A DNA stretch of 64,000 nt from positions 32,550,001 through 32,614,000 of the forward strand of contig OZ004608.1 of the NCBI GenBank assembly GCA_963924565.1, written 5' to 3'. Positions 4,201-38,400 of the stretch are shown here, piece by piece. Position numbers and translations under genes: made by a program. The first letter of the stretch is position 1. Every line of letters begins with the position of its first letter. The stretch comes from Ascidiella aspersa. Its lineage: Eukaryota. Below the pieces are notes generated by a model. It ran no database searches and was not told where the DNA came from. It was given only the letters and a program-made list of their open reading frames with translations.

Positions 4201-4401
4201 AACATCCTCATCCTTGTTGGAAGTTTTAACGAGCTCTTTGGAGGGGGCACCAAATTTTTCAATCTTTTTGCGAAACTTTCTTCTGTCCAATATTCTTTGC
4301 TTTCTATTTTTACTGATTTTGCCGATGAAACCCCGTCGATTGTGCTTCTTAACAAGCTGAACAGGAGCCGAAGATATGTTTAAGGTTAACTCTTCAGTCA
4401 T
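1246..4401 (-). CDS. DDX31: DEAD-box RNA helicase DDX31/Dbp7, 4 exons (4401-2868, 2578-2431, 2181-1977, 1497-1246), 712 aa
   Basis: Motifs SQTGSGKT, PTRELA, TPGR, DEAD, SAT, ARGLD and HRVGRTAR. Family-typical GGQNRKSEKARIRKG, AFVAYIRAYATYP, LHIGHVAKSFAL and C-terminal SEFSSGL. All introns GT-AG with consistent phases; total 2139 nt. Confidence 0.93.
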
Positions 4402-14400: not shown

Positions 14401-17400
14401 TGTTTTAATTAAATACTTTTTCTTAAACTTGGCGTTTTTAAATTTTAACCCAATTATTAAATTAAATAAATGTAAGCTTGTTATTTGTTTCGTTTTTTAT
14501 GTTTGCTGTGCGAAATATCGCTCAGAATGGCACGTGTTTACCATATTTAGACGTTTAACATTTTTGATGCCTAAGCCGTTACTTGATTGACTACTTGCGT
14601 AACGAATGACTTGGACTAGGACTTGGCTTGCAATTTGTTTAAAATTACCGGACTTGGACTTTTCAATTCGCAAGTAGATTAACTGGGATTTGTGTTATTT
14701 CAAATTGACCTGCTACAACACTGCTTGTCTATAATTTAGTTTAACAATGCGTATTTATCTGAAGGGTGTCTGGTGAAAACGACAGTCTTCAGCAAATAAT
14801 TCAACGCTCGATCAGCGCCATCGCTAACCGAGGAGAAATAAACCACAAGGGACAAGGTAAGCATTGTAAAATCACTCGTTTCTCTCTAACACTGATCGCA
14901 AATCTAAAAGTAAACTACATTTTTATAAAGATTAGTGTTTCTCAATGTTTGGATCACGACCTAAAATTGGCTCGCCGAGTGCAGTAGTTCATATGTTTAG
15001 ATTTACTGGAATTGGTTCTAAGCTTTATTTTTCCAGAATCCATTTTTTTTTCGGCAAAAAATGTTTGCCGGAAGAGCAATTTTACAATTGTTGAATGTTG
15101 CTTGATGAACTTAACACACGGGTTTCATATATATTAGGTATTTTTTCGCTTCAAGAGTTGTGTTTGAAACATTTTTAGCTTCGTATTTCCTTGCTACAGG
15201 TTTTGGCTTTAAAGCAGTGGTTCCCAAACTGTGTGCCGCGAAACTGTTTTGTAATTTTGGAAAAGAGAGTATTTGTATTACCAATAGCCTAATAGGCATA
15301 TACGCAAGTGTTTTAGACTTATATTTGCACTATTCAATTAATATTTTGAGAAATTTACATAAAGTTTGTCGTGTGGTAAGGCGATTGTAAAATGACTCTA
15401 TTGTTGTTCTGTTAAAAGTGTGCCGCGAAATAGTTAAGATTTTTTTAGGGGCCGCGAGTCAAAAAAAGTTTGGGAACCACTGCTTTAAAGTGTTGATTAA
15501 AAAAAATTGTTAATTGAATTAAAAAGATTTAGTCCCACATGGTATTTAAAGCAAACAGGACAATGTGATGTGCTTGCTTTTATAATGGAACCTGTGTCAC
15601 GTTTTTGGCAACAAAAAAAATTGCCGTAACAGCATATTCATACCTACCTACCTTGCTGATTTTTGTTTGTGATTTTCCTTCGCTAAAACAACACTTACCC
15701 CGGTGTTTCCTTTCCAGGTCTCTGGGTCTCCCTCAAGATGCTCAACGGCGATCTAAAGTCTATCCGGAGGGACTTTCCCCATCTGGTCGACCGAACGACT
15801 GCCGTGGTCAGAAAAATGGGATTCCCGGAAATCATAATGCCCGGTGATGTGCGAAACGACCTCTACGTCACTATAGTGTCGGTAAGGAGATAACTTTTTT
15901 TAAACGAGTACTTCGTTTTTATTCGCTTTTTTGAATAATGAGGCTGGGGTCGACTATTATGGTAAAGAATTGCTCAGTTGCATTTGTCATGTTTTTAATA
16001 AATATATTTAGTGAGTTTTGTGGTCGACTCGTCTGTTCTAATTGATTGTCGAAATAGAAAAAAATCGAGCCGAAATGTAGTATTTTTAAACTTTGGCGTA
16101 AATAATACACTGGATGAATAAGCAATATTTTCTATACTTAAATTATTTCAAGGAAATTTTGGTTAGCAGATTTCGAGTAGTAGAGATTAACTTTTATTTA
16201 TTTAAAATTACACAAGACGTTTTACTCTAAACCTTTAATTGTTTTTGTGTAATTTCAGTTTAGCGTGGGTCTGATCAAATCTTGAAACTTGTTGTAAGTC
16301 ACATTTTAACTAAAAACCCTAATCGCACAATTAAGTAGTCTAAACAAATTTTTCTGACGATTTTGTATTTTATTTTTATTTTTATCTCTGTTGTTTAGGG
16401 TGAATTTGAAAAGGGAAGCAAGACCTCGCAGAAGAACGTTGAAGTCACGATGTCTGTGTGCGATAATGAAGGAAAAATTCTGCCGGTAAGTTTGTAATAT
16501 TGGCCCTAGTGTTTACGGCCTGTCTGTTTCATTTCGACGGCAAGCTCTAGGGCTGTGGGTTAGAAACCCGGCCTAACAGTATGACAGGACGCCAACGGAA
16601 AGTAATAAAAAAACGAGTGCATTTTAGAATCTAGGTCAAAAAGAAAAAAAGGGGTATACATGGCGATACAATTTACGAAAAAGTTTGAATTTAATGGCCT
16701 ACCTGTGGCCTCAGGATGTTTTTTTTTTTTTTGGCAAATTTCGGTAAAATCTTGCTAAGGACCGATACGCATGATTTAACCACGGCAAATACTGCAGTTG
16801 GAATCCAAACCAATTTATTTAACCACCCATTTTCAGGTCACGACCCTTAGTATTTTCGAAACCCTGTCGTTCGTGAGTATTTCACAAGTCTCCGAAACGT
16901 TGAATTACTCTCTTCCTTTGGCACAGTGCACAGTTGCATGTTAACTATTCGTTTGGTACTTTTTTTATCCAGATCGTGGTGAGCATGGGATCCGGCGAGG
17001 ACCCCGAAAGCCAATATCGCTCGCACATCTACTACCAGAACAAGACGCCTCGCTGGATGGAAGTTGTCAAGGTTCGTTTGCCACTTTATGTGTCGCTAAC
17101 TGTCGTTTTTTCTCAAACGAATCAAAATGAGAAATCTGAATTAACAGAAATAGAGTGACAGGAATGTTGAGTGGGTTACGCTGTGTTTTTGGATGAACGT
17201 TAAGCTTTTATGTATTGTGCTTAGAATCAATGATACCTTCTTGTAGATGGATAATTTTTTTCAAATAAATACAACCGTATTTCAAAGCCAAAGTGGTAAT
17301 TGCAAAATGTGGTATAACTAGTGCAGCTGTTGGGATGATCAGTGTAAAACTCCGTGTTTTAAGATGCGACTTTTACCCTTCAAATTTGTCACAACTTGTT

Positions 17401-20400
17401 TCAAGGTTCCACTCTGTTATAACTATATTGCTTTAGGGCAGTGTTTCTTAACTTTTTTCGCGGCAAACGGAATATTAGGCGTAAAACTAACAGCCAAGCT
17501 TCTGGCTAATTATATTTACTAAACCTATAAAGAAAAAAACTAAAACAAATGACAGAAAGAATATCACTGCTGTATGGTCTTTAGCCAACAGCTCAACATA
17601 CACTACTTTATAGTTAGGGCACAAAATATTTCATATTAGTTATTGCAGAGTGTGCAATATTTGTCTCTTGCTCTCGCATAGGATTTCCTTATGGCGTGGG
17701 CGGATAGCGTGGTAAAACTATAATGATTTTGCCAAGCGCATTTTAAATGAAAAGTCAAATCGCAAAATCTGCGTTCTTTCAGTTGGAAGCTATGAATTGA
17801 CGGGCTCGCGGTTTTATGGTAATTCCTTACAAGAGTATTTAAATTGTGGGCAATTGATTACCCCCTAAAGAGTATTTTAAATATGAAACTATACGGGATA
17901 ACCACACTAGCATAAACGCTTGTTATTACACCATGCTTGTGTTGTTTTATCAAAAATTGCTACATTTGGAGTGATATAAATTTGTCCTTTTTGCCGAGGG
18001 CAATCATAAAACCTTTGCCCTGTGAAAAAGGCGCAATTAAGCTCTATTAACTTTTCCCGGGTGTAACAGTACTACACAGTTTGTAACAATACAAACCGCT
18101 ATAAAAAGACCTACTTAATAACAAATCTCCCTAATTACCCCACAAACCCCCATCTCAGGTGCACGTGCCCATCGAGGACTTCTACAACGCCCACCTGCGG
18201 TTCACTTTTCGCCACCGTAGCAGCAAAGAGCACCAGGACAAAGGAGAAAGGGACTTTGGTCTTTCATTCGTGCGTCTAATGCGTGAGGAGGGGACCACGC
18301 TTCATGACGGAATGCACAACCTCATCGTGTATAAGGTAAGGTGTTTTACAGAATGAAAGGAACACAAACGGTTGCTCAAAACCAGGGCTGCGGAATCGGT
18401 TAAAATAAACCCGAGTCCGACTCCGGCCAAATGTGCGATTTTAGCGAGTCCCGAGTCCGGTTGCTACTGTACAGTCTATATTTCACCCATGTACTCTAAA
18501 GTCTACATTTTACCCATTTGCATAAACAAGTTGGATTTTCGGCAATCCGCTTATAGAGGTGGCATATAATTCATCAACTCACAATACATGGTTGGAAAAT
18601 ATCCAGCATATGCTATTCCGCCTTTCCAATTTACAGTTTTAAAATTTGGTACTGCGTATTCGCACGTCGGACTGTGGTTGTTTTACATGGTCTTACTCGG
18701 GTACCGAGTTGACTCCGAAGCCCTTATCAAAATATAGTCTATCTATATATAGACTGTTGATACCAGGCATAATATTAAAAGGATAACTGCGCTGGTAATT
18801 ATTTTTGTTCTCCCAACCTTTCGACGACCCATACTGGTTGCCCTTTTTAGGACGAATGACGCCGATTCCACTATTTTTTCTAATAAATTGTCGCCCAATG
18901 TAACTACAGCTATACTATTAGATAACTAGTTGCGGACTTGCGTTAAAAATTGAAACATTTGGCGTCTTTGTTAATAGCTAAGCAGCCACCTAAGACGAAC
19001 CTTTAAAAAATGTACACGGTGAAGCAAAACTACGTCACTGGGCATAAACTTCGACTAAAATCTACCCGAATAGGTCTCGCAATAAAAACGAAAATAAGCA
19101 AAAACTTGCAATAAAAATCAGCAATACAAGGAAAGCATTCAATTAATTATACACACATATATGTGTTCAACAACTGTGATCTAGCCCTTCTGAAGCTGCT
19201 TTTTGACCAACGATTACGGCTTACGTATCATTAGTACACCAAAAAGCCATCTCTGTTAATATTTTGACAAAAAAGAAAGAAAAATAAAGTTTATGTTAAG
19301 GCTTCTGTGGTATCGAAAAAAATAGACTCTTGAATTACCAACTGTGCCTACTTACATCTATAATTACTTTACCTGGTCTAACATTATTTGGACACCAAAC
19401 CAACCAACTATCTTCATCGTAACATTACAATCTTGTAAAATGTCAATTATTGGTTCCATTGCCGGCGCTTTAAACAGTTTATCGATTTGGAAATGCCTGT
19501 ATGTGGGTGGAATATAAGCTATGGGTTGACATTGCACAGTAGCGTTGTTTGATGTGTAAACACGTCGGCATATTATATCAAGTGGCAAACAATACGACCC
19601 TACCAACATCCTATTCCTAAGTCTATATCAAGTGCAGTCTGTTATTTCTTTTTGACAAACTGAAAAGAAAACTAACTGTTGAGTTCTTAAACAAAACTAA
19701 CGACAAGAAAAGCTCATACAACCACTCACTATTATTTAGGCTCAACGTATTTTTTCAGACGAATAACTTTTTTGTTATTTTAAATACAGTATCGTGGAGG
19801 ACGCCAGCACTAAGCTATTATTTTGAAAATAGAGTGTCATATAAAAAAAAAACTAGTATATTATCTCGCCATGGTAATATTTTGTTCCACATTATTCCTT
19901 AACACGATCCGAAATAAATGTTAAAAAGGATCGTTCGAATAATTTGATTCTGAGAACCAATGATCTTAAGACTGTTTATTTATTAAAACAGATAAAACCT
20001 AAAATCATTTCTTAATTTTTTTCAGAAATATATATTTCGCCTATAAGGCATCGTCAGTTTCTTAATTCCCATGAATTCTGAGAACCACTGTTTCTCTTAT
20101 ATAATCACATTCTAACAACCTTTCAATCTCAAGGTCGAAAATCGTCGAATGGAGGCCAATGACGCACGAAAATATTTGACCTTGAACTCGACACGCGAGG
20201 AGCTGGACAACAGTCTGCACTCCAAGGGCAAGGGGGCCGCCTCACCCACCTCGGGATCCAGGGGGTTTAACCCAAGGGCTGAAGGCTTCACAATGAGCAA
20301 GGATTCATTTCAGATCTCAACCCTGGTCTGCTCCACCAAGCTCACGCAGAACGGTTGGTTGCCTTCATTTTAGTTTGGAAAGGCAAATTTGTGTTCTGCG

Positions 20401-23400
20401 GTTAAAATTACATGCTTCAAAAAACAACTTAAACCTGTATTTTTCACCACAGTGTTTACCACCAAGCTTACGCAGAACGGTTGTTGGAAATAGTTTTTGC
20501 TTTTTTTTGGTAAAATTTGATTTGGGAAGGCAAAAACATTATGGGTTTAAAACCTAGGGATGACCGATCAATTATATTGCACTACCGATGCCAGATGTTT
20601 AAAAGAATGTATATTTTTTATTTATATATTTTTTGTATATTTAAGGATGCCCGATCCATTTTATTGCGATACTAACACTCGATATTCTAAAATTATCGCG
20701 ATCCGTTACCAAATGGCGTCATTACTATTCGCAAACAAGCAAAATGGAATGACTAAAACCGTACAAAGGGTTTTTTTCAGATTGTTATGCTAGAATGTGC
20801 TTTAGGGCTATTAAATTTAGTTAACTCAAGTTAAACCTAGCATTTTTATAAGATTAAAGTATAGATATGCTGCGGTTGATTCATGGTTGAAATTTTTATA
20901 TTAGTTACATATCTTATTGGCACTTCTATCAGCCTAGTATTGGACAAGCAGCGATGCTTTTAGTTGCACTTCGCATCGGGTATTGAATCCAATCTAGGCT
21001 GTTCAGCAGCATGTTGAGGATTTTTGTAAAATCGCGAAGACGTTAAGACGTTGTCTGTTATTTTTTCGCTAAGGAAGCTAGGGAGTTCTTTTATTATAAA
21101 GTGCTTCAAAAATTTGTGATACATGATGATAATTCGTTTTTGATGAGAATGGAATTTTATACAACAAAGGCATAAAAATTACTAATTAATTAAACAAGCG
21201 CTAGTTTTTTCGACAAATATAACTACTGGCGTTCTCCATGTTTTAGTAGCAAAATGGCACTGATATTTTAAAAAGTAGCCAGATAAAAAGGAACCTGATT
21301 AACAGTGTGTAACTGTGCCTTAAAAAATGATTTAAACCGGCATTTTTCATTAACTTCACTAATCAAAATGAGACTGAGTATTACAAATATTTTAAACGTC
21401 TGTGTTGTGATATTTATTTGCAAAGAAAAATTAACATGCGTCTGGTGCGAGCCAGGGTTATAACATCATGAGCAAAGGTTTTAATTAAAAATCTGTAATA
21501 AAATGGTCCCTTAACCTGTATTTTCACCACAGTTGACCTCCTCGGGCTCCTGAAGTGGCGAGCCCAGCCCAACAAACTGAAGCGAACTCTTGAGTCGATC
21601 ATGAAAGTTGATGGCGAGGAAGTGGTCAAGGTAAATATCGGTCACTTTTCTATATGCTTAAATTTAGTAAGTTAGAGGTATTACGAAGTCAAACTTTGTC
21701 GGCCTTTCTTTTTAAACGGACCATGAAACTTAAAATTGTTTAAACTTGAAAAATGACAAATAATTATTAAAAACGCCGAAATAGTTCAATCAATTAAAAA
21801 AAAATTCTGCAGCTTTTTTATCTAGCTGTATGACGGTTTGTTTTGCCAATGCCTAATTTGCTAACTTTTCATTTCTGCTGTTCAAGCATAGTTTCCCAAA
21901 GAGAGAAACATCACCACTCTCCTTAAAGTCCGTTAATTTCTCAGCATTTCAGCCCCCTTCCTTCATTTCTGACTTTAGTTTCTCCAAGACACGCTGGACG
22001 CTCTGTTCAACATCATGATGGAAAACCCGGAGAACGGAAGCTTCGACGCAATGGTTTTTGACGCACTGGTAAGTACTTCATTATTGAACGTGTTCACCAT
22101 ACATGGTTGCCACAAACTTTTTGAATATTCAAAGGTTTTGGAATTATTTTCACACTGAAAAGTGTTGGAAAAACCCTATGTTTTTTTTTAAATCTTAGAA
22201 TGGTCGTTGAATTTATATTATGTCCACTGTCCAGCTTAAGTTATATGTTTTAAAAGTGCCGTCATAAAAACAAGTGAAAATGTTTTTTAATTGTTGTGAC
22301 CGTGACATTTAAACTGTTTTGTTTTAGAATTATAAATTTATGACAAACTGTTGCTTAGATCTACATCATCACGCTCATAGCTGAGAAGAAGTTCTTTCAT
22401 TTCCACGATGTACTGGACAGCTACATTCTGGAGCACTTTAGCGCAACACTAGCATACGAGTAAGTCGTCAAACTTCACTATTTATGTTGAACAGGTAATT
22501 TTGAAATTAATTAAATCTAAGTTTTTATTTGGCTGTATGTAATCTTTCGGTTCGCTTGGTGTCTACTGCCCCAAAGAATATAGCCGAATAGTAAGTCCAA
22601 ACGCAGGCGGTGATGATAAGTCAGAACTCAGAAGTACCGTTTTTTGATTAAATTTAAGTAAGTTTTCTTTAAAACGCATTTATGGAGCCTCAATTAAATC
22701 TTTCCGAAATGAATTGATGGAAAAACAAATAAAAGAGGTTGTAGCGTAATAAAAAGAGTGCAAGAGCTTCTGGGTGACTACTGTCCACTTGAGTTTAAAA
22801 CAGTCCTTTGATTTAACACTAACAAACGGTAAGTTGCAATGCTTTTAATCCGGGCGGGTTTCGGGTATTATTTTTTTTTTACCAAGTAACTTGTCTTCAA
22901 ACAAACATCTTCCATAATACAAGGCAATAACTAAAAAAGGGTCCGGCTTAAGATATGAAGTACACGTAACACTAGTCGAGTACGTTTGCAAATGTCCAAT
23001 ATAAAAACATCTAAAATTTTAAAAACGATTTCTTTGTTTTCCAGGGTTATATGTTGTTTAGTGTGCAGTGTGTATACGGACATTAAGCAATAACCTACTG
23101 CACCCCGTACCACCTACTATTGTTTAGCTTTATGACTCAATCCTTTTCGACACCTTTTAGGACTCGTGCTGACGTCAGCACTTCTCGATTCGCTTCTGTG
23201 ACCAAACAAAGCCCATTATTTAACCGACACGGCTGCAAGGTTGCAAAACTACTAGTTACGCCGTCGCGCACTGAGTTCCACCTTTCCACACTAAAGCAAC
23301 ACGGCCGCTTTAAAATAACTTGACAACTATATGCACTGCAAAAACTGTCAGTATTATATTTGTACGCTGTCCGTCTGCAGCTATATTTTTCGAGAAATAA

Positions 23401-26400
23401 CAGGTGCAAAAATAATTTCTTTTAGAGGTACTCCTCGTGTTCGCATGCGTGGCTATTTCGCTATTATAGTGAACCGCAACAAAATATAAAAAGATCCAAA
23501 TTTAATACCCTTCATTGGTTATAAACGCAGTTTAGTATTAAACAATTGCGATAATTATAAAATCGGCCTCTAAAACTGGGTCACCTTTCCCCCACAAATT
23601 GGGCATATATGTATGCATTGTGAGACAGTTGAATATATAGGGTGCCAAAATAGCATTACAAGTATGGTTGGAAAGCACCCGTTTTAAAAAAATAATATGC
23701 AGCCTGATAAAGCGTAAAAAATACGAAAAAATAAAAGGCACACGAACTGGCCTTGTATAATTAAACAAACCACATATGTTATTTTTACGATAGTTGCTCC
23801 TTAATTCTAGGAAACGCTTTATAGTAACAGGTCCTCATTGTAGCATTAACAAGAAAGTCTAATAGGCGTGAAAAAAATGCCCAAAACTGACTAACCACGC
23901 ACTAATTGAATACCACTTATGCTGCTTGGATATAAAAATGTCGTAGGTTTAGTAAATGTAGGTGCCTTAAAGGCCGTTTTGTGGGGTGTTTCTTTTAAAG
24001 GTGACCGCCAAGCTAACTCCCTAACTTTTTTGCTTAACAGGAAGCTGACAACCGTCCTAGTGTCGTACCTGGATCAGGCCAAAGACCCAAAGTACAGGGA
24101 TCCGCTTGTGAAAGCCCTCAAGTCGTTGGAGTACGTGTTCAAGTTTATCGTGCGATCCAGGATCCTATTTCAACAGTAAGTATTTTAACGATTTTTGCTT
24201 AGAGTATTGGTAGAGCTTGTGTTATTACCGCGGCGGGCCCTTTGTTTTCCTAAAAATCTTAACGCAGATTTACAATAGCTGCGTATTTACATATTCTTAT
24301 TGCAGGGTTGCCACAAAGTCTTGGAGTCTTTCGCTGTCTTAGAATTGATTTGAAATGTCTTCTACAAAAAAACATAAAATTGTGTGGCAAACCAGTAATG
24401 TCAAAAAGAAGATCGCTAAATCATTGTCATCTATTTGTCCGATAAATTCAGATCAATCATATGTACGAATATCTTTGTCACAGTTTATATATTGGCGAGT
24501 GTTATTTTGTCCGGGCGAGTGCTGATTGGTACGTATAGTTTAATTCAAGGCCAACCCTGTGTGGTATCAACTTTTCTAAACAGGCAAACCAACATTTTTA
24601 AATTGCATATTTTGAAGCAGTGAGATATTTAATACAAGTTGCACTTCAGTACACTGCTTAACAGTTGCTTCTGTTAAAGTCTTTGTGGTGTGTTTGTGAT
24701 ATGGTGGCCGTCAAGAAATAGTAACCCGAATTTATTTGCGAACGTATGTCTATACGGCCTTTTAGTTGATGTATTATGGCGTCTTATGACACACTGCTCA
24801 TACCTCCACAGGTTTGACGATAAAGGAAGACAATCGTTCGAGCAAGGAATCCGCAAAGTTTTCGAGTCGGTCAACAGGCTCATGAAAAGCACAGAAGACT
24901 CCATGATCGTTCCACAGGTTAGCACTAACGATACTTGGCATTTTTTTCCGATACCGATAGCCGATATTTTTGGCAAACAATATCGCGATTCGATCTGATT
25001 CGAAATAGCGTTTTTACTATGGTCATTGGTCAATAAAGCACAAATTGCTGAGTGCAATGGCATTTTTTTTAGGATATTAGGCGGCCAAAATGTACTCTTG
25101 CGTAAAAAAACCTCTTTTTTGGCGAAGCATGACTTTAATGTGCCAGGTATACGGCCCGATATTATCGGACATGTTTTGTTGGAAGGTTGACGAACGTTTT
25201 TTTTTGTGTGCTTGCTTTTTCCATTGGTATTGATTTCGTAAAGACAACGGCTCACCAGACTACGCCACACGGACCAGATCAGGAGCGCTGAGTTAATTCT
25301 GCCGGGCCGAGAAACGGTTCCTTAATGAAGAAATCACAGTTAAAATGTTGTCCAATGCGATTCAAACAGAATTTTTATGAAATTTTAAACTAGACGATAA
25401 TTTATAGAATCTCACTTTAGCTTTTGTGGCTTAGTGTAGCGTTTCTGTTTGTCATATGCCGGCTGCGAATTCTAACTTTAATTATTAATTTGCGCCTTTA
25501 CTTTAATATTTTAGGATTTAGGGTTTTTTAAGCTTGGGCATTTCGAAATGTATTTCATTGTGTAACGATTTCTTTTTTCATTTTTCTTTTTGGTTGATGA
25601 GGTTAAAAAAAAAAAAAAAAATCGTTACACAATGAAATACATTTCAAAATGGCCCAAGCTTGAAAAACCCTAAATCCTAAAATATTAAAGTAAAGGTGCA
25701 AATTAATAATTAAAGTTAGAATTCGCAGCCGGCATATGACAAACAGAAACGCTACAGTTAGTCAATAATATATTGCGTTCGTTCAACGAAAATAAAGTTT
25801 TTAAAATTGTACACAACAATTTATATTCGGCCGCCATCGCCAGACTTCAGTTATTTGGCCCTTTAAAAATTTGTACATCGCACCTAACCATTGTTATTGA
25901 CTCGACTTTGACTCAACTAATGAGTTGTTGTCAGAAAAATCGCTCGGTTTTAACGTATTTTTCTTCAATGTGTTTTACAACTTCCAGGCGACGGCCATGA
26001 AGTACGTTCCATCTGTCATCAAAGATGTCGTGACCGTGTTCGATCCAAAACAACTAAGGTAAGTCCATACCCCCTTTCTGGTTAAACACTCCCAAGAAAG
26101 TGATTCCCGACTTCCCTACGTATTAATCCTATGCGTAAAAACACAGAAAAAAATATTTCGAAAGAACAGCAAAAAAACTTTTTATGTGATAAGTCCCTTT
26201 AAACGTCTTTACCGGCACTTACCAAAATTACAAGATTGCTGCATCTATTCAAAAGCTAATAACCTCTTCCCTTATCGTAATTGTCATTGGAGAATGTAAT
26301 GGGCGTAATAAGTTGACTTCTACACCAATATACCGGTAGTGAATGGATCGATGTTTGACAGACAGACCCCCGCAGCTTTTTATGATTAAGAACGGCTTTA

Positions 26401-29400
26401 CAAAAAATAAATGGGCTTTATTGAATTTTCAAATGGGGTACACTGAAGTTAAGGCGCCATTTGTTGAATTCGGGCGAGCCAATGTAGTTTTAGACACTGC
26501 TCGCCGAGTTAGGTGCACTCATTTATCCTAACAGTTGAGCTTTTTTTGGCAACACTACCGCCCATTATTTAGGCTTGGCAGCTAAACTTTCCACCTGAAT
26601 CAAGTATGTTTGGCTAACATTAACAGTTCATCCCAGTTTTGGGCCTAACAGTTAGTCCTGCTTTTTGGCCTAGTACTTGGGCCTCGCTTTTATTTATACC
26701 TAGCTGTAAGGACCTAACTAATCAATTAGCCGGTAGGTATTCAAACTTAACATTGGGGAAATTATTCATACCTCTTGTAAGTGTTAGTAGCAGACGGGCC
26801 TAGAATTTGTCCCTAGTATTTTGGCCTAGTGCTTGTGCTCAACACTATAAAACGCCACGCGGAAACGCAATACAGACAAACTCGGCGTTATCTCCGCGAG
26901 AGATAGATGAATAGCAGCGAACCTAGAAGCATGACGACAACGCATCAGCAGCACCAGGAAGTTGGTCTCTCGCCTTGCTCGTCGCTCGTGTTGGTTTAGC
27001 CCGCAGCGTGATGCCAAAGCAGGTCTGGCCTCTGATTGGTCGGCTCTGCCTCGCTATGCTCTGGCGGTCCTGTTCAAATAATAAGCCACGGAGACCTGCG
27101 ATATAAGTAGGGCTTTATTTGACCGCCACTGTACAGCTGAGTCCAGGTGCCTGTTTACTGGTGTAAGGTCGTGTGTTTGGGATTAGGTTTCGCTTCTAAT
27201 GTATTGTAATTAGGCTGTGGGTCTTTGTAGCCTCTGTTAGGTGATGAATGGCACTTTGGCTGTTTTGTAGCAGATTTGCGCCAGACAGCCAATTGAGTTT
27301 AAATAGGGTTTCTTCACTTTGTTCTTCGACAGTCGAGTGGTTTTATAGCCACGTGTTGTGCTACGTTTTCAGCAGGTAGATGAGAATGCTGTTTTAAACT
27401 GGGATTCCTAGGTTTGCAGTGTAGTTATGAAGTAATGTGCTTATCTAGCGACGAGTGTATGGTGCTTGAGATTTTTCAAGTTTTATTAAGCCCGAACCAA
27501 CCGCAGTATTTGTTTTTCGAGCAAGGTTAAGTACTTGGCTGCTGCTGGTATGTCGCTCTTATAGCTCAGCTCGGGTTATTTTGTGTTTATTTTTATTGTC
27601 TTTAGACAGCACAACTGAAAAGCTGAAACAGTTAATACAAGCGTGTGTTTTTCTATTGGAATAATGACGAATAAATCAAATTTGTGTTTTAGCAGAATGC
27701 ATATCATCCTGGGATAAAAACTAGTTTGTTGTCAGACACATGAATGAAATATAATCGCTCAACCCGTGACCACTTTTTGGTCATTAAATGCAGAACGATT
27801 GTCAAGGTTGTTTACCAACAAACCGTCTGTACGTGACCGATGAAAATTATACTTTGTGTGAAATAGGGCCATTGGACAAAATATGTCATTCAGTGTTGAG
27901 TTTAGTTTTAAACCCAATCATGCATGTAGCAAGCGAGTGTGTAATATTGCGGTTGTAGCTTGTAAATGTAACTGATGCAGTCCATATTATCACGTTTTAA
28001 TAGATTTAATCCTCATATCTGTTGCAAGCATTACAAGCCCACGTATTGTCAGGTCCAGCCAAGTATTTAGGAGGTAATGGACTGTAGGTATGGAAGTTTA
28101 AGGATTAAATAATTCCGAGCACACGACCACTCCTAAGTTACAGCCAGGCGCGACAGGTTACTGTAGCTATGGTTGGTGTTTTAGGTTAGTGTTAAGACGC
28201 AGCCGAAAACTCCACAAAGTGTAACTGCTGTTACTGTTGTTACAAGCAGTTTAAATCATAAAACGACGAATTTGGCGTTGGCAAAACTTTTACAAATCTG
28301 CAATAACCCCAGGGCCATTGCTTCTCAGCAAACCTAGCAGACATTAAGTAGGCCTAAAGTTAAATTTACTTATCTGCACTATTTCCCTGTAGGTAGTTAG
28401 CACAGCATGACAATAGGACGTTCGTACTACCTGTAAGAGACTGAAAACCTACACGAGCGCCAAAAGCAGCTTGGCTTCCAAACAACTGAAAAAAACTAAC
28501 AATAAAGACACACCTTTGTGGACACAAAATGGACGCCAAACGACGCCCGTCGTTCAGTTTGGCCGCCAAGGTCATCCGAAGGACGCCGTCGAAGCGCAAG
28601 AAGCCGATGGCTTGCAGCACCAACATGACCCCCGGAGCCAAACCGCCCGTGACCCCCTCAAAACGGCGCCTTAGGACCACTGGAACCGATTTAATTAGGA
28701 GGGTCGAGAATGCCGTGAAAGCGAAAAAGATCGAACACAACCAGAGGTTTGCCTCTACAGCTGCTGATGTAGTTTTGGCTCAATATAAAGCGAGAATCAG
28801 TAGTAGGATACCGACGTGTTTTAAAATTGGTGGTTTAATATACAGTATGATGTTGGAAAAGCTTTTGGGCTGCTGTTACTGTTTTGGCTCAAATTTAGCG
28901 AAATCCCAAGCCGACAAAAAGCGTGTTTTTAAACCGATTGGTAAAATCAACTGTACAAAAGGATTTCGTGGGACCAAAGTGTTCTGCTTGGCTAGCTTAT
29001 AACTCCCTGACCGTAATATTGGCTTCTATCGTATTGATTTATTAGGAATTTCTGCAATTTTTTTTTGTTGCAAAACAGCATTAAAAAAACATTTTTAATT
29101 ACTCGAAAATTACCACTCTAAGATAACTTACAGCTTTTTTATTTTTTATTTTTTTTGCATTTTTGTACCCTTTGTGATGCTTTGCGCTTGCTTTAACCAA
29201 ACCTTTTATATCCACAGCTTGCTGCTACAGGATTTCATCAAGAACGTTCCAGCCGAGCGACTGACGCGCCAGAAGGTTCACTGTATGCTCGAGATCGTAC
29301 ACAGCGACATATTCAAGATACAAGGCAAGTGTCGAGCCATTGCCAAAAGTATTGCAAGTGCACGCACATGTTTTTTTCAAATGACCCAAACCTGCACCAA

Positions 29401-32400
29401 CCCCTAAAATCAAATTTGCACCCCCGTTTATCTATATATTATATAAGCGTGGTACACTTTTGATCTTTGGCGCAGCCCGTCACCCTGTTTTTTCGGCCGT
29501 GCACTAATTGCTTTGTTCCTATTGTAACACGTCGTTTCCTTGTAGGAGTTGCTTAGCTATATATAGGTGGACAATTGAAACAAAGTAGTTTTAGCGGTTT
29601 GCCAAAAACAGATGTTAAACAAACCAAATAAAACTTACAAATTTGCGTTTACCTCTGAATTTGTCTTGGTCCTATAAGTGAATGATTGAAAATATTAAAG
29701 TCCATGAGCACATTTTGGGTTGTGTTATTTAAACTTGAATGACAAATGTGCCCTGTTTTTTGCTTCAAATCCCTCGCTGGTTTCCACTGTTAAATAGTAA
29801 GCAGCCTAACTGCAATTTGGTTTCGTTTTAGGCCCATATCAAACATATAGGATTTGTAAACGGCCAGCAAAGATGGCATAAAAGATAAAGACATAAAATG
29901 TCAGAAGATGACAAAAAACTCCAGAATCTGAATCCAGCGCTTCATTAACAGCTCTGTGTGCTTTACAGAATGTCGCATATTATCTTGCTGGTCCCAACCC
30001 GTTAGCTAATAAGCAACCTAACGACATCTTTTTTGTTTAAGGTCCATACGTAGAATGTAGGCGTTGTAAATGGCGAGAGAAAAAGCCATAAATAATAGAG
30101 CCACAAAAAACTCTCTGAAACCCGTCCCACCTTAACAGTTCCGTGTACTTTACAGAATGTCGCATAATCCTCCTGAAGATGATCATGACCCACCTAAAGG
30201 AACTCCTTGAAAAGAACGAAGAGATGGAGGTTTGTGTTCTCCTCCTAGGAGACATCCTCACCCTCCTCCGCTCATCCGACGTGGTACGTCACTATGGCAA
30301 CAGTAGTTTTGTTGAATTACTTAGCTTCATGCGTGACCTTTTTGGATAGTGTTCGTGATATTAGCAATGAACTTTTTAGCTCATTTTTTGATCGTTAAAG
30401 AACGTAATTGAATGTGTTTTTTCTGGTTGATTGAGTTCTTTGTACCTTGGTTAAACTAAAATATTTTTGCCGTAAATCATTCAGTACCAAGAATTTAAGT
30501 TTTGTAAAATCTACTTCGCTCTTTTATGTAAATTTTCGAGTTTCTTAAATGAAGTATTTAAAGGCGGTTAAAATCTTCCAACCAAGGTTTTTTATTTGTT
30601 TGTCGATCGATTGGCGATTTCCCTATCTTTATCGTTTGGCGCAAATGACGTTGCTGTATTTCTTTTATTTTGACAATTTAAAACTAAACTTGCTTAATCC
30701 GCCAACTTTTTAACCGAATTTTATTTTTATCTTTAACCACTTAATATCATCAAGTTCGCTGTTCTTTCTCCGATTGTGATGTGCCGTACTTTGTCTTAAG
30801 TGCTGAAGTGCCTGTGACGTCATAAAAGCTAATTATTGTCTTTGCAGGATTCATCGAAGAGCGATATCCAAGAGGTGACCAACACATTACTGAGGACTGT
30901 GATACAAACTGTCATCAAACTCGATCGACAAAGCAAGCAAGCGGTGAGTGGTTTAAACTTTACCTTCTTTTTATTTTGAGAAAAAAGCGAATCAAGATGG
31001 CAAGCATTGTTAGTTAAAAAAAAATCACTTCAATCGTATGGCACTGTTTAAATCTACTGTGTTCAAAGAATTAGTTCGCCATGGCTGAAGCATCCCAGGA
31101 ATTCGTGGCGCGTCTAATTATAGCCTGCTGTGATTTCATTGGCGTCAAACAGAGTTGAATAATTGGCGGCAGTTTTCTCCTCGCTAATCTCCAAGTCGAA
31201 ATAATTTGCCTACGTATTTCGCTTAGTGTTCAGAATTTTTTTGGTGAAATTCTACCACCCTCCCCTAAGTAAACGAAGATTTTTGTAAGAATATAACTGC
31301 CGACACGATTTTCCTCGAAATTGCGCACTTTTTAACATTGGATTGTTTTTGAATCGAGAAACACACTATAACACTTGTCGAAAAAAAAGTAAATTTTTGG
31401 CTGTCAAAACAGAGAACATGGGGTGTAATGGTGAATGTTAAAATAACAATTAAATGTTAGTCAAGTGTAATATCTTTACCATATTTTCCATTTTATAAAT
31501 TTCAATTCCTAATTTAGTTCGCTGTTTTGTTGTTGTTGCTATTTACTGCTTTGAACTGTTTTGTGAGGTTACTTGAAAGAAATCAGTTGTTTGGAAAGAT
31601 TTATATTGGTCTTGTTTCGCTTTGACTAGACCAGTGGTTCTCAAACCTTTTTTCTTTCATGGCCCATTTACGTTGCAAAAACATTCTGTGGCCCAAAAGT
31701 TTTATGCAAGAAAAAAATGTAAAATAGGTTTGAACAAAACACAGCAGAACATATGTCAAAACAGATTATTTATTCAACCGTGCATTAGTGAGATACTTGC
31801 GGCTGAACAATAAATTTACATTCCTTTTTATTTCCTCCCCAAACCCTTATTCCTGTAAAATTAAATTGACACAAATGAAACTAAATCTAGCTCTTTTAAT
31901 TGGTCTGTGGCCCACTTCAAATGTTCTTATGGCCCACCAGTGAGCCATGGCCCACTAGTTGAGAACCGCTGGACTAGACCAATGGTGGAAAATTATTTTT
32001 GACAGAGAGCCATGAGAAAACAGAAAATGTCTTGGGGGGACCGTGTCAAAAAAGAGGATCTCGAATACACAGAATACAAATTGTAATTCCATTAAAAAAA
32101 AATTGTAAATATTCTTGTTTTGACAAGCTGGTAAGGGTAGAAATAAGTGAGGATGCCTTACAAAAGTGATATATCCAAAAAATACTCTGAAATCATTAAA
32201 AAATTCTTAAGGCTTATATTTGCGAGATAATTTTTTTTTTAATAAGCCTCCCGGGCCGGATTATATTGCTTGGCGGTCCGTCCCACTGGCCGTGGTTCGC
32301 CCAGGCCTGAACTAGACTTTACAGTCACAGCGGGGTTTCTTAACCAGGGTTGGAAGAACTGTTCCAAGCTGAAACAGACACAGATAATGTTTTACTGTAA

Positions 32401-35400
32401 TGTATTTATTTGCTCAATTAAATGTCAAACTAACTAACATTTGTTATCAGTAGGGCCCGCAAAAGTCAATAAAGTTAAAATTTTTTAAGAACCTCGTCTG
32501 TTCACGAATCAAAGAACAAAGTTGTTTTCAGCATCTAGGGGACTGTTTCTAAGAAGTTTATAGGTCAAAATAAAGTTAAAATTTACAATAAAGTTAAAAT
32601 TTGTCAAATTATGGCTTTTGACAAAGTTTTTGTGTTTCTTGAGAGTAATTTTTGTAAAAATCGTCGTGGAAGCATTGTAAATCAGGAACTGCGATACAAT
32701 TAAACCATATTAACCCATAAAAGCAGGCAAAATGTCACAATGCCCACTTGGATCAGCGGTAACTTTTATCGCAAATTGTCCATTTTATTTATTTATTGTT
32801 ACGTATTTAGATAATTCTTATAAAACACTTTATCTTCATAAACGTGGTCTTTTCGAAGATCAACAATTTGAATTTTAGAAATAGCCTACTGACATTCTGT
32901 AATACAAAAATGCCTAAGCAAACTAAATCTATCGCCAAAAACCCGATGCACTTTTTTATGACTTTGCGACAAAATATTACGTTTGGGTCTGGGATCGACA
33001 AAATATTATGTTTGGGTAACTGGCATCAATTCAAGGAGAAACTGTGGCCTCTACAAACAAGCAATTTCGTTAAACTAAGTTAAAAACATTTTTGTTTAGG
33101 TTAAAATAAAAATGACCCTAGTTATCAATTACCTGTATAAAAATAAAATTACAATGGTCTTGTTATTTAAGCAATTCTAGAAGGGGGTGCGAGAATTGGT
33201 TGATGATTTAAAAGGGGTGCAGCAAGGAAAAATGTTAAGAACCACTGGTCTACAGAATTAAAACGGTGTATTATTGTGCAGGCGAGTTTCGTAGCCTGTC
33301 TTATTTCGATGTTACGTCAAATGGAGGAATATCATTACGACGCTTACCTGTCTTCATTTCCCAACAAGTTCGACCTAATGGTGAGTTTACTTTTGAAAAG
33401 ACTCCTGAAATATTTATTATTTGTCGCAACTGTTGACAATTATCCTTTTTCGGTTTAACATAATTTACCAACGGTAATTGTTTACTTGGGATTTTTGATG
33501 TACATTCGCAATGAAACTACAGGGTTGTGGTCAGGTGCCGGTTGCTACGAAATATTTAAATCTTCAAAAGTCTTTAAAAAATCCTATTTTTTTTTAACCC
33601 TATGTTTTGTTTTTAAACCCTATGTTTTTTTAAACCCTATGTTGTCTTTAAATATTCTTGAATTTTTTGGCCTAGCTTAAGTTATGTTTAGAAAAGTTGA
33701 AGTTCCGAAAGTTAAAAAAACAAGCAATTCAAAATATTTTGAAATGTGTTGACCATTACATTTGTAATGTTTTGTTTTCGAACTATATTCAGAACAGAAA
33801 AAACGTTTAGTGATCCATTTTTCGGTCTTTAAAAACAAATTATCAAGTCTTTTACTTTTTTTTCATAAAATCGTGGCAACCCTGAACTAAGATAACATGA
33901 ACAGTACGTTTGTAACGATATTAATCATATTTGCAGCGACTATATGGTATATATACCGCCATCCTTATAGGGTAACCTATGGCAGGACTTGTTGGGTGCA
34001 TATGCATGACTTTAACTCAAATCCACGTTTGCCGAATATTTTATTTTTATGGGCTACCTGTATATTACTAAGGAAATTTTCAGTTTACTCCGGGTAACTT
34101 TCCTTTGTCGCAAAATGTGATTTTCATTTCATTGTAACATTTGTAAGCATATTGGTATTTACTTTTTGATGCGGGTTTTTAACTATTGAAATTTATCTTC
34201 CTATTGAATCTACGCTAATTATTCGCCAGGACTTCTTGATGGAAATCTTCTCGATGTTCCAAGACCTGATCGGCAACAACGTGTACAGGGGAGACTGGGT
34301 GACTATGACGTCACTGCAAAACTCGTACGTCGTGTAGCCAATATTGTAGTTTTACATTACTTTTGCAAATTCAGTTTTTACTAGTCACTACTATAGGAAT
34401 ATATCTATTTCGACAAAAATGTTTTTGTTATGTGCTTTGTGGAACTGTCTGTTTTAGAAAATTTTATAACTCATATCACTGCCGCTGTATTGAAGTGGTA
34501 CCAAAACCTTGAGAAAAACTTACAAAAAGGTATTAGTAATATAGAAAACTTCTGTTCGTCATTTCTGCATTTTAATTTTAATTTCACTTTTCGTTGACTC
34601 TGGATGTTTTTAACTAGGGTATTCATGCGAGCCATCAAGTTCTTCACCAAGACTCTCAACAAGTCATTTCTCGACGAGACATCCTTCGAATCGCAGGTAC
34701 CTTGTTGTTTTTACTGCAAATACAGCCATCTTAATTCCCAGTCATTTGAGAAATAACTGCAAGTCTACAAGTCAAGTCCTTGATTTTAAAATAAAGCGTA
34801 ACTAAAACTAATAAATTGGTACCCTCGTCCGATTATTAGCAATAAATAGACTAAAAATAACAAAACGTCATATACAGCAAGCAATTTTTTTGACGTACAA
34901 AAAATGCCGAACTTTATTGACAAAATATTTAATAGAAAAACTTACTTTTACCATAAGTTATTTAAGTCCAAGTCAAGGTATTTGAAAATAGTGACTTAAG
35001 TGCACCTTCGTCAAGTCATTTACAAAAGTCACTACAGCACTGCGTATAACCGTATTTGAAGCCTCTCATTACCTGAGCTGTAATTATTTACGCAATTGAT
35101 TTATTCTCAAAATGTGAGCCATTTCAAAGTGTTATACATTATAATATTTCGGACATATATTTTTCCGTTTAAGTAACACATTTGCAGGTTTACTATAAAT
35201 TGGCCTTGGCGTTTGGTTAAGGCTTTCTATTGTCCTAAACGGTTATTTGAATATGCGAAGATGTCCATAGTTTTGAAGTACAGTGCAGATTTAGACTACA
35301 CCAGTAATTATAGAGTTAGATTTTAAAGACCAATAGAAGTTTAGGGCCTGTTTTGTTTGCCCAAACTACAAAATTACTTTCCTGCGTAGGTCAATACTTA

Positions 35401-38400
35401 ACAGCGTCCCTGTTTTTAATTTTCCAGTTGTGGAACAACTTTTTTCACCTTGGCGTGACCTTCCTGACGCAAGACCCACTTCAGATGGAAAGGTTCACCC
35501 ACAACAAGCGACACAGCATGGTCAAAAAGTAAACAATTCCACTATTTAAACAAGAATTAACCCGTTGTAATACAAAATCGTTGTGTTTGTTTTGTTATAG
35601 TTAAAAAACTACTGGACGATTTAATGGGGCCCCTTAAAACCCGGTCGTTATTTATATACAACTGTGAAAATTATTCACATATAAGAAACATTGTTGGGGT
35701 GTTTGATTTTTATAGCGTTTGAATTTCGAGGGTTGATTAATCTGTTCAAGCAGTAATTTTCTAACGATTCAAGTGCACTTCACATAAATGTGTCACGTTT
35801 TTTATTAATTCCTAATGTGTTTTTTGAAGTTTTTTTTACTTGGTTTATACCATTAATACAATGTGTAAGTTATTTTTGTTTTTGTTTTCTTTCTTGCCCA
35901 CTAAACATTTTTTGCTATTGGTCACATGCAGTCGGCCTCAACCGCTTTTACCTCACTTGTTTAAGCTTTCACGAAATTTATATTGTTAAAGTATTCAAAT
36001 AGACTCGTATTTTTGCTCAACTAATCCTAACCTGACTTTTTTAATTTTCAGATACGGCGACCTCCGTTGCGAAATGGGATACGAGATCAGAGGGATGTGG
36101 TTTAACCTCGGTAAAACGTTTACTTATTTTTCTAACTGAAAGAAATATTATATTATACTAAAGTATGATACATATTTCGGCTTAATTACTTTACTGACAC
36201 TCTTGTCAAATGTATCAAGATTTAACCAAGACATGAATTTTCTAGCGTTGTGTATTTACTGCCCTTGAACTTTTTTTCAATTTAATTGGTTTGTAGTTAA
36301 TTTTGTGTTCTGACTTCATTGTTAATTGTATTTTAACCAAGATTCAACCAAGACGTTGGATTTTCTATCTTAGCGTCCCTGTAGCGTTAAAACTTTTTTT
36401 AAATCCCTTTTAGTGTTTTTTGTTTATTTCAAATTCTGAAAATATTTTTCAAGTTTATTAAAACCAATATCTTAACAAAATCGAGTACAAAAATAAAACA
36501 AAATTAGGTTTTTTCTACTTTTGTATTTTTCCTTTCAAGTTTAAATCAAATGAGATTTAGTTCAATCACTGTGTTGACATTATTTCAAGGTGTATTTATA
36601 TAGTTCTAAAAAAGTTTTTTTTAATTACTTTTAGGCAAGCACAAGATCAAGTTTATCCCAGGAATGGTCGGCCCCATGCTGGAAATGACCTTGGTGCCCG
36701 AGTCTGACCTTCGCAAGGCCACCATCCCGATATTTTTCGACATGATGCAGTGTGAGCTTCACAGCACCGGAAACTTCAAGACCGTAAGTTTGGTCGTATC
36801 TTATTTGACCAGAAATCAACAACGATTCTATAGCGATACTTTATCAATACTGAAAAAAGTCGACTGATTTATAATGGTTTACGAGACGGCCATTCGTTCA
36901 ACAGTAGGAATGTGATTTGCGTCTAAAAATTTCCATAAATTTGGAAACCACACCTTATTTACCTGAAAATTGTAATGGTCTTTTCCGAAAGCGAATTTTT
37001 TAACGACACTGACAGACACACAGTGGCTATGCAGCCGCATCTTTTCATGTAATTTAAGTATGAAAATAGGTTCAGGCAATACTAGCTTTGATCAAGATAA
37101 CACCTCGTTCTCAAAATTAATAACTTTATATAATAGAGTGGAAAATGTTACTCCCGATTGCAGATTCGCCCATTCGTTTGTATATATTAGCCGCATTAAT
37201 GTATTAAGCCTGAAGTTAAACAAATCTGTAAAAGGTTTGACGATTAAATTTATTTTATCTTTTATAAAAAATCGATTTGTCGTGTTTATAAAATCAAAAA
37301 TAAAATAGAAAATCGATCTGTGTTACGTATCCTTGAAAGAGTTTCAAGTCTGAGATGGCAATTTCCAAACCTATTTAATTCCAAAATAAAGCGAATCTAA
37401 CTCCTGGTTTTACTTGAGATTCCCGCCCTCTAACGTTGTTTTCCTACCTAGTTTGAGAACGAGATGATCACTAAGCTTGATGTTCTGGTGGAAGGAGGAA
37501 GAGGCGACCAGGAGTACAGGAAGCTATTCAACGAAATGTGAGATTCTGTGTGATTTAAATATACCTGGGTTGGTATTAAAGCACAATGAGGTGTTCAACA
37601 AAGTGGATTTTTAATTTTAATCTTCTTTAACTTTAAAATGACAAAAAGATGAATGTATCTTTAAAATGACTTTGCATTAATCTTCCTTTTTTCCTCCAAA
37701 ACATCCGATTTTTTTTCGTAACCTGAGTTCCATATGTCTTTAGGGTCAACTGACTCGATAACCATTTTGTGGTTCTATGTTGATCCTTTGCTACTGTTCT
37801 CGCATTGAGCAACAAATCTTATCTTCAATTTTATAAAAGAATGTTCTGAAACTGGAATGGAAACGCCGTTATACATTTTTCCGCTCATATGGCTCAAAAG
37901 TTTAGTCTCAAACCCCGATATTGCAACTACCTTACTCAAAAATTTTAGATTAGACAAAGGAAGCCAAAATTCAAGAAGTTGTTTAAACAAAGAAAGAATG
38001 CTCTTCACCTGAAAAAACAATGGAAATTTTTAATGATTTTTGGAAAAAAATATTGGGAAAAAATGACTTTGTAATAGGTTAACTTTCCCTGCTTTCAAAG
38101 TTTTATCCTTTTGAAAAAGTACATTATTGTATTTTTCATGACTTGGAAAGACGACTATACTTTTAAACCTTTACGTTTATAAAGGTTTATGACCTTAACA
38201 TGTTAACTCTATCTCTCCTTTCTAGCATGTCGGAGTGGTGTGGAAAGCATCAGTACCTACGTACATCGGGCGTCGAGTTCGTCAACCTGGTCACCAAGCT
38301 GCTGGGACGACTGCTCGACTACCGTGACATCATAAGGGACGAGAATCGAGACAACCGAATGAGCTGCACCGTTAACTTACTGGTAAGTTAACCCATGTCG

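What the first reader, a model, noticed from the sequence alone, without database searches (positions are those of the whole stretch)
26850..29324. Hidden internal first exon: a short DOCK isoform with SH3 and DHR-1 replaced by a polybasic, CDK-site N-terminus
Seen: DOCK intron 23 (3.2 kb, one of the longest and poor in MITEs) holds a CpG/CCAAT/TATA-like block, an acceptor at 28392, an in-frame stop at 28487 and a good-context ATG at 28529. A GC-rich frame then ends at AG|gtttgc in phase 2, which exon 24 needs. Use as a cassette from the 28392 acceptor hits TAG at once, so it only works as a first coding exon. The peptide [72 protein letters not shown] is very basic, with NLS-like clusters, an RRxS (PKA-type) site and two full T-P-x-K CDK consensus sites inside the basic patches. 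Established: SH3 plus adjacent helices mediate ELMO binding and autoinhibition, and DHR-1 binds PIP3. Inference: a ~1093-aa ELMO- and PIP3-independent Rac GEF with a phospho-switchable nuclear or membrane targeting signal. I know of no description of such an isoform.
Basis: partly seen in the sequence, partly recalled or inferred. Interest (0 to 1): 0.8.

Follow-up and report, generated by a model that had tools for sequence, protein, structure and literature searches.

The report
Conserved hidden start exon in DOCK
A long intron of a sea-squirt DOCK (Rac activator) gene holds a real protein-coding start exon, also kept in a second species, that most likely makes a short DOCK lacking its ELMO- and lipid-binding half, but no RNA data could be read to prove the splice.

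Summary
The sequence features are at the stated coordinates: acceptor AG 28391-28392, in-frame TGA 28487, ATG 28529 in good context, 72 codons, AG|GT at 28746/28747 in phase 2, which exon 24 (29218) needs.

New evidence: one other species, known only from metagenome contigs, has the same exon upstream of its orthologous DOCK exon 24.
- Similarity starts at the ATG and stops at the donor.
- Codon positions 1/2/3 are 72/75/33% identical (pN 0.25, pS saturated).
- Only this frame is open in both species.
- The flanking intron cannot be aligned.

So this is a conserved coding first exon, not a chance ORF and not a repeat (single copy).

Corrections:
- The genome has CpG o/e near 1 everywhere, so the "CpG island" argument is void.
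- The frame does not end at the donor here. It stays open to 29002 (157 aa), but that tail has intron-like composition and is not conserved.
- This species' donor (GTTTGC) is weak.

Best reading (about 0.68): an alternative first exon giving a DOCK of roughly 1,100 aa without SH3, DOCK_N and DHR-1. The scan noted similar hidden start exons in other genes of this genome.

The parts
25988..26058 (+). Ends AAG|GTAAGT in phase 2.
   Evidence: Read directly. Pfam TPR_DOCK positions 165-190.
26059..29217 (+). Host intron, 3,159 nt, among the longest of the gene. In the relative the matching intron is at least 3.0 kb, against 0.2-0.7 kb for its neighbours.
26850..27130 (+). Unsupported: CpG is not above the genome background and no similarity to the relative was found.
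28373..28392 (+). Pyrimidine tract plus AG acceptor, 136 nt upstream of the ATG. A candidate spliced-leader (SL) trans-splice or cis-splice acceptor for the 5' leader. The relative has an equally strong acceptor 118 nt upstream of its ATG.
   Evidence: Its use was not observed.
28393..28528 (+). Putative 5' leader. Has TAG at 28394 in the exon-23 frame, a short uORF and an in-frame TGA at 28487. Not conserved with the relative.
28529..28746 (+). Conserved coding part of the alternative first exon: ATG, 72 codons, then the 2 bases AG. GC at codon positions 1/2/3 is 0.46/0.54/0.72, like DOCK exons (GC3 0.66).
28747..28752 (+). Donor GTTTGC, weak. The relative has GTGAAC at the aligned place.
28747..29002 (+). 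Unspliced continuation of the frame (85 more codons, to TAA). Intron-like composition (GC3 0.39) and not conserved. Most likely intron.
29218..29324 (+). DOCK exon 24, the proposed splice target. It needs 2 bases from the upstream exon (AG+C = Ser). Aligns to human DOCK5 residues 846-876. GC donor.

Best explanation
Window 28529-28746 is the coding part of an alternative first exon of a DOCK1/2/5-type gene in a sea squirt. An mRNA that starts inside the long intron gets its 5' end at or upstream of the acceptor at 28392. That end would be made either by addition of the spliced leader (SL) or by a non-coding upstream exon. Translation starts at ATG 28529. The exon is joined at 28746 to the next DOCK exon (29218) in frame.

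The product would lack the SH3/ELMO-binding end, DOCK_N, the C2/DHR-1 lipid-binding domain and about the first third of the helical ARM/TPR region. It would keep the rest of that region and the catalytic DHR-2. It would begin with a new 72-residue head: about 42 basic, unstructured residues carrying the conserved motifs [13 protein letters not shown] and TPSKRR, then a 29-residue helix that runs to the splice junction.

Shown: the exon is coding, conserved, single copy and compatible in phase. Inferred: the splice itself, the promoter or SL use, and all biochemistry.
For: 1. A full-library phmmer search found one hit, P0001 (E 9.6e-12, 53% identity), covering query residues 1-78 only.
2. Its contigs L004-L006 carry the homologous ATG..AG|GT block, followed in order by ten orthologous DOCK exons. 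Nothing else in the intron is alignable.
3. Conservation begins at the Met and ends at Asn-Gln plus AG|GT in both species.
4. Identity by codon position is 0.72/0.75/0.33, with pN 0.25 and pS 0.86. That is comparable to neighbouring exons 24 and 25 (pN 0.30, 0.31). Only the sense frame is open in both species.
5. GC3 is 0.72 in the exon and 0.39 just after the donor. DOCK exons have 0.66.
6. Both species have phase 2 at the donor, and exon 24 starts with C, giving Ser.
7. Both have a strong acceptor 118-136 nt upstream of the ATG, with an in-frame stop between acceptor and ATG.
8. There is no AATAAA between the donor and exon 24 in either species.
9. The predicted helix 43-71 runs to the exon end, with pLDDT 84-90.
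10. About half of Ciona genes are SL trans-spliced (PMC4691747).
Against: This species' donor, GAG|GTTTGC, is poor. It scores -1.2, at the 45th percentile of all GTs in the intron, and none of the 20 trained donors has T at +3.

Here the frame stays open 85 codons past the donor, a coincidence of about 0.4% (my rough calculation from base composition, not a tool result) that remains unexplained.

Only one relative was found. No predicted protein in the searched databases joins the peptide to DOCK sequence, although length filters and clustering could hide such proteins.
Confidence: 0.68

Rival explanations
1. An independent small-protein gene nested in the DOCK intron on the same strand. The mRNA is not spliced to DOCK and encodes a 72-aa basic protein in the relative and a 157-aa one here.
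For: Unspliced, the ORF is complete in both species. In the relative a TGA follows directly (NQR*), so AGG+TGA would give AG|GT without any splice site. Here the frame is open to 29002. This species' donor is weak.
Against: The two C-termini would differ by 85 unconserved residues of intron-like composition. There is no AATAAA or ATTAAA in the 1.3 kb before exon 24 in the relative, and only one ATTAAA here. A same-strand transcript carrying a donor would normally splice to the next acceptor. The phase match would be a 1-in-3 coincidence.
Confidence: 0.12
2. The exon is a first coding exon but is joined to a downstream acceptor other than exon 24, either a later DOCK exon or an unrecognised exon.
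For: The splice target was not observed. Only the phase argues for exon 24.
Against: Exon 24 is the first acceptor downstream and is in phase in both species. Six-frame comparison found no other conserved non-DOCK block in the relative's contig.
Confidence: 0.08
3. A 'poison' cassette exon: 28393-28746 is included between exons 23 and 24 of the full-length mRNA, brings in a stop codon and lowers DOCK output. The ORF has no protein role.
For: Inclusion gives an immediate stop in both species: TAG at 28394 here, and TAA after four codons in the relative.
Against: Conservation is at the protein level, bounded by the ATG. Third codon positions are only 33% identical and the leader is not conserved. 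Selection on a splicing or nonsense-mediated-decay element would give the opposite pattern. This use could coexist with the main reading.
Confidence: 0.05
4. A chance ORF or a decayed relic with no present function.
For: In simulated introns of this composition, 35% hold an ATG-ORF of at least 72 codons on one strand. No expression data exist.
Against: There is a syntenic homologue with a coding substitution pattern although synonymous sites are saturated and the introns cannot be aligned. The exon has coding-type GC3.
Confidence: 0.03

Closest known systems
Mutually exclusive first-exon isoforms of DOCK9, DOCK10 and DOCK11 (PMC7551865, listed)
   Same: A DOCK-family gene gives proteins with different N-termini by choosing between first exons.
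   Different: By that paper's abstract, the DOCK9 isoforms are full-length amino-terminal variants. Here the exon lies about 840 residues into the protein (DOCK5 numbering), so it would remove SH3, DOCK_N, DHR-1 and part of the ARM region. The gene here is of the DOCK1/2/5 type, not DOCK-D.
N-terminally truncated isoforms from intronic promoters in other genes, for example the NH2-truncated p73 isoforms (PMC2734544)
   Same: An internal start gives a protein that lacks the N-terminal regulatory domains and has its own short unique head.
   Different: A different gene family. Here the promoter is not located, and the 5' end may be made by spliced-leader addition, which vertebrates lack.
Engineered DOCK180 lacking its SH3 or N-terminus, and the ELMO-DOCK autoinhibition model
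   Same: Such constructs lack the ELMO-binding end, as the predicted short isoform would.
   Different: Those are laboratory constructs that usually keep DHR-1. This would be a natural product that lacks DHR-1 and carries a polybasic head instead.
Hidden alternative start exon of Scribble in the same genome (scan note s1-801612)
   Same: A conserved ATG-initiated exon with a basic patch inside a long intron of a large scaffold gene, predicted to give a tail-only isoform.
   Different: A different gene. That note reports a lipid-anchor signal, which this peptide lacks. I did not check that note.

Membership tests
DOCK-A/B type Rac GEF gene (the host gene) | DOCK_N (PF16172) and C2/DHR-1 (PF14429) lie upstream of the intron | tested here: met
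   DOCK_N exons at window 9538-15827 and C2 exons at 16378-20352. The best solved relatives are DOCK2 and DOCK5.
DOCK-A/B type Rac GEF gene (the host gene) | The TPR/ARM region flanks the intron and DHR-2 lies downstream | tested here: met
   TPR_DOCK positions 165-190 and 191-232 on the two sides. DHR-2 lobe A at 39174-41335.
DOCK-A/B type Rac GEF gene (the host gene) | N-terminal SH3 domain | not tested
   Presence is expected from the DOCK_N type, but no SH3 search was run.
Alternative first coding exon (N-terminally truncated isoform) | ATG in good context with an in-frame stop upstream, so that it cannot be an internal coding exon | tested here: met
   Here: TGA at 28487 and acaaaATGg. 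Relative: TAG at 1432 and cattATGg.
Alternative first coding exon (N-terminally truncated isoform) | Protein-level conservation limited to ATG..donor, at the syntenic place in another species | tested here: met
   E 9.6e-12, codon-position identity 0.72/0.75/0.33, pN 0.25 against pS 0.86, colinear DOCK exons. Only one relative is available.
Alternative first coding exon (N-terminally truncated isoform) | Donor in phase with the next constitutive exon | tested here: met
   Phase 2 in both species, and exon 24 begins with one base (C) in both.
Alternative first coding exon (N-terminally truncated isoform) | Donor of usable strength | tested here: inconclusive
   Relative: AAG|GTGAAC scores 5.2, inside the range of real donors. 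This species: GAG|GTTTGC scores -1.2, below all 20 trained donors. The matrix is small.
Alternative first coding exon (N-terminally truncated isoform) | RNA reads across 28746>29218 and a defined 5' end (TSS or spliced leader at 28393) | not testable with these tools
Independent nested small-protein gene | Conserved stop codon and C-terminus | tested here: not met
   The stop comes directly after NQR in the relative but 85 codons later here. The tail is not conserved and is intron-like.
Independent nested small-protein gene | Own poly(A) signal before the next host exon | tested here: not met
   No AATAAA in either species. One ATTAAA here at 29080 and none in the relative.
Poison (stop-carrying) cassette exon | Conservation at the nucleotide level, independent of reading frame | tested here: not met
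   Third positions are 33% identical, the leader is not alignable, and blastn finds no match.
CpG-island promoter | CpG observed/expected above the genome background | tested here: not met
   0.97 in the block against a window median of 0.99.
Full CDK consensus (S/T-P-x-K/R) and basic NLS-like clusters | Motifs present and conserved | tested here: met
   RRTPSKRK and TPSKRRL are identical in both species, as is KRRPSF. This tests the motifs only.
Full CDK consensus (S/T-P-x-K/R) and basic NLS-like clusters | Actual phosphorylation or nuclear import | not testable with these tools
   Needs experiments.

The most novel reading that the evidence does not exclude
One sea-squirt DOCK1/2/5-type locus makes a second Rac GEF that needs neither ELMO nor PIP3. 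Its targeting comes from a conserved polybasic head with an RRPS site and two TPSKR(K/R) CDK-type sites, so that location at membrane or nucleus is switched by phosphorylation. Because it keeps DHR-2, it could also pair with the full-length protein. Its mRNA might even be cut out of the DOCK pre-mRNA by spliced-leader addition at the intronic acceptor, with no promoter of its own.
Probability: 0.22. Interest if true: 0.7.

Novelty: new variant of a known kind. Interest (0 to 1): 0.55.

Why it matters
DOCK1/2/5-type exchange factors are understood as ELMO-bound, autoinhibited enzymes recruited by PIP3 through DHR-1. A natural, evolutionarily kept isoform without those parts, with its own basic and probably phospho-regulated head, would be a second mode of control for Rac activation in a chordate relative.

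It would also give a simple natural test of what the N-terminal half contributes. The three literature searches run here found no DOCK-A/B isoform of this kind.

The case also shows that coding first exons hidden in introns can be validated from metagenome contigs of a related animal when no annotation exists.

Tried and rejected
Only local composition scripts read the whole window file. The exon 28393-28746 makes up 0.57 of the stretch I queried, close to X1's share. That is a hint only.
2. Pfam on the 72-aa and 157-aa peptides found nothing meaningful. Rfam on 26000-29125 found nothing. The repeat search found only short chance pairs.
3. Word-index protein searches with the 157-aa ORF, the two-species alignment and P0001 region 11-86 returned nothing beyond P0001 itself. 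Length windows and clustering could hide a spliced isoform.
4. The own-genome search for paralogues of the peptide found none.
5. Promoter conservation: sensitive blastn of the upstream 2.5 kb against the relative's 1.6 kb gave only 10-mers.
6. Polymorphism among L004, L005 and L006: no differences in the exon, but too few overall to mean anything.
7. The 291-310-aa database proteins are not evidence for a long ORF. They are TGA=Trp (code 4) translations; the standard code stops at codon 72.
Exons were searched one by one.

Full report
**What is in the sequence**

- The upstream DOCK exon is 25988-26058 and ends AAG|GTAAGT in phase 2. The intron is 26059-29217.
- A pyrimidine tract ends in AG at 28391-28392. 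If the following stretch were used as a cassette after exon 23, the frame reads AG+G and then TAG (28394-28396).
- An in-frame TGA lies at 28487. The ATG at 28529 has A at -3 and G at +4.
- 72 codons follow, then AG|GTTTGC at 28746/28747, in phase 2.
- Exon 24 (29218-29324) supplies one base, C, giving Ser. It ends in a GC donor.

The host gene is a DOCK of the DOCK1/2/5 kind.
- Pfam DOCK_N exons lie at 9538-15827, C2/DHR-1 at 16378-20352, TPR_DOCK at 21976-37535 and DHR-2 lobe A at 39174-41335.
- The two exons beside the intron match TPR_DOCK positions 165-190 and 191-232.
- The nearest solved structures are DOCK2 and DOCK5.
- Exon 24 aligns to human DOCK5 residues 846-876.
- A protein starting here would therefore lack everything up to about a third of the way into the helical region. 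By analogy with DOCK5 it would be roughly 1,100 aa. This is an estimate; I did not sum the exons.

**Three corrections to the observation**

1. This genome is not CpG-depleted. Observed/expected CpG has a median of 0.99 over the window and is 0.97 in the 26850-27130 block. A "CpG island" therefore means nothing here. The block is only GC-rich.
2. The frame does not end at the donor. Unspliced, it stays open to TAA at 29000-29002, giving 157 aa.
3. This species' donor is weak. On a matrix built from 20 donors of this gene in two species (scores 3.1-11.3) it scores -1.2, about the median of all GTs in the intron. No trained donor has T at +3.

**Is it coding?**

Composition says yes for the first 72 codons and no for the tail.
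- DOCK exons here have GC3 of 0.66, against 0.365 GC for the window.
- The 72 codons have GC1/2/3 of 0.46/0.54/0.72.
- The 85 codons after the donor have 0.34/0.46/0.39.
- The segment is single copy in the 308.6-Mb assembly, apart from a 140-nt piece at 27876-28014. The peptide has no paralogue in the assembly.

**Comparative evidence (the main new result)**

After the word search came back blank, a full-library phmmer search with the 157-aa ORF gave exactly one hit, P0001. It scored E 9.6e-12 at 53% identity and covered query residues 1-78 only.

P0001's cluster has eight near-identical members from JGI, ENA and Logan contigs. Three JGI contigs were fetched as L004-L006. They are 99.5-99.8% identical to each other, so they are haplotypes of one species.

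In L004 the homologous ATG is at 1498 and the block ends CAA AG|GTGAAC at 1710/1711. Ten orthologous DOCK exons follow in the same order as in the window: exon 24 at about 3005-3113, then 3334-3504, and so on to 7498-7587. Most DOCK exons are 75-89% identical in protein; the two nearest, exons 24 and 25, are about 60%. The introns give no blastn match at all.

The evidence for the exon, point by point:
- Similarity starts at the Met. The in-frame leaders are unrelated, and each has a stop: TGA 28487 here, TAG 1432 in the relative.
- Similarity stops at Asn-Gln plus AG|GT in both species.
- Identity by codon position is 0.72/0.75/0.33.
- pN is 0.25 and pS is 0.86, which is saturated. Pooled DOCK exons give pN 0.166 and pS 0.80. 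Exons 24 and 25 give pN 0.30 and 0.31.
- Only the sense frame is free of stops in both species.

This is the signature of a translated exon under purifying selection, evolving about as fast as its DOCK neighbours.

The 291-310-aa lengths of the database proteins are an artefact. They equal a TGA=Trp translation of the contig. Under the standard code the relative's ORF stops at the TGA inside its donor (GTGA), after NQR.

**Splice or separate gene?**

For splicing to exon 24:
- The donor sits exactly where conservation ends in both species.
- The phase fits exon 24 in both, and both exon 24s start with C.
- The relative's donor is normal (5.2, 93rd percentile).
- There is no AATAAA between donor and exon 24 in either species. 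The relative also has no ATTAAA in that 1.3 kb.
- The tail after the donor is unconserved and intron-like.
- The predicted fold is about 42 unstructured residues followed by a helix, 43-71, that runs to the junction (pLDDT 84-90). That suits continuation into a helical repeat region.
- In the relative, the host intron is at least 3.0 kb, while its neighbours are 0.2-0.7 kb.

Against:
- This species' donor is weak.
- The 85-codon open tail is an odd coincidence of about 0.4% (my rough calculation from base composition, not a tool result). The relative's tail also has only TGA stops for 219 codons.
- There are no RNA data.

I put the spliced short-DOCK reading at about 0.68 and the nested small-protein gene at about 0.12. 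Another splice target gets 0.08, a pure poison cassette 0.05 and chance 0.03.

**How the mRNA might start**

Both species have a strong acceptor 118-136 nt upstream of the ATG. Earlier notes of this scan call the genome a sea squirt with spliced-leader (SL) trans-splicing. I did not test that myself.

In Ciona about half of the genes are SL trans-spliced. Putative discarded 5' pieces average 438 bp, with a peak near 100 bp (PMC4691747).

No upstream sequence is conserved with the relative, so the promoter is not located.

**What the head may do (inference only)**

The conserved parts are [25 protein letters not shown] and the helix G-DLI..EN..AKK-E-NQ. The stretch between them varies in sequence and length.
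- The motifs fit an AGC-kinase site and two full CDK consensus sites set in basic clusters.
- A basic head could replace DHR-1 as a membrane or nuclear address, and phosphorylation could neutralise it.
- Loss of the SH3/DOCK_N end removes the known ELMO interface.
- Because DHR-2 remains, pairing with the full-length protein is conceivable.

None of this was tested.

**Literature**

Three full-text searches found mutually exclusive first exons for DOCK9/10/11, where the DOCK9 pair is described as full-length amino-terminal isoforms (PMC7551865). They found no natural internal-start isoform of a DOCK-A/B gene. A blank in this library is not proof of absence.

**Limits and compliance**

- The joined spliced model was not built, searched or folded. 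All searches were exon by exon.
- Only one relative species is available, and its identity is unknown.

Noticed in passing
window 2809-4401 (-) and 4647-6314 (-): Two long intronless ORFs on the minus strand upstream of the DOCK gene. One is a 530-aa DEAD-box helicase (DEAD plus Helicase_C). The other is a 555-aa protein with a Trypsin_2 peptidase domain.
   Followed up: partly
window 29324/29325; L004 about 3113: DOCK exon 24 ends in a GC-AG intron here (AAG|GCAAGT), whereas the relative has an ordinary GT donor (AAG|GTACTA) at the same place.
   Followed up: partly
window 28747-29002; L004 1711-2370: The frame of the new exon stays open 85 codons into the intron here. In the relative it has six TGA but no TAA or TAG for 219 codons. 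Neither tail is conserved or coding-like, and both are unexplained coincidences.
   Followed up: partly
P0001, P0003-P0008 (L004-L006): Public metagenome gene calls translated these animal contigs with TGA=Trp, creating spurious 291-310-aa proteins from a 72-codon exon plus intron.
   Followed up: yes
G000:C4:3843623-4102200: Several open frames of about 285-330 aa, without stops, give weak hits to DHR-2 lobe A (E 0.02-0.6). They are spread from 3.84 to 4.10 Mb on contig 4, four of them between 4.07 and 4.10 Mb. This may be a small gene family or noise.
   Followed up: no
window 27876-28014: A 140-nt piece of the intron has a 78% identical copy on contig 8 (L002), probably a small dispersed repeat.
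   Followed up: no
window 24674-25270 (-): A 198-aa GTG-started ORF antisense to a DOCK exon region, with no Pfam match.
   Followed up: partly
window 28407-28436; L004 1381-1392: In both species the putative leader carries a very short upstream ORF soon after the acceptor: 9 codons here and 3 in the relative.
   Followed up: no
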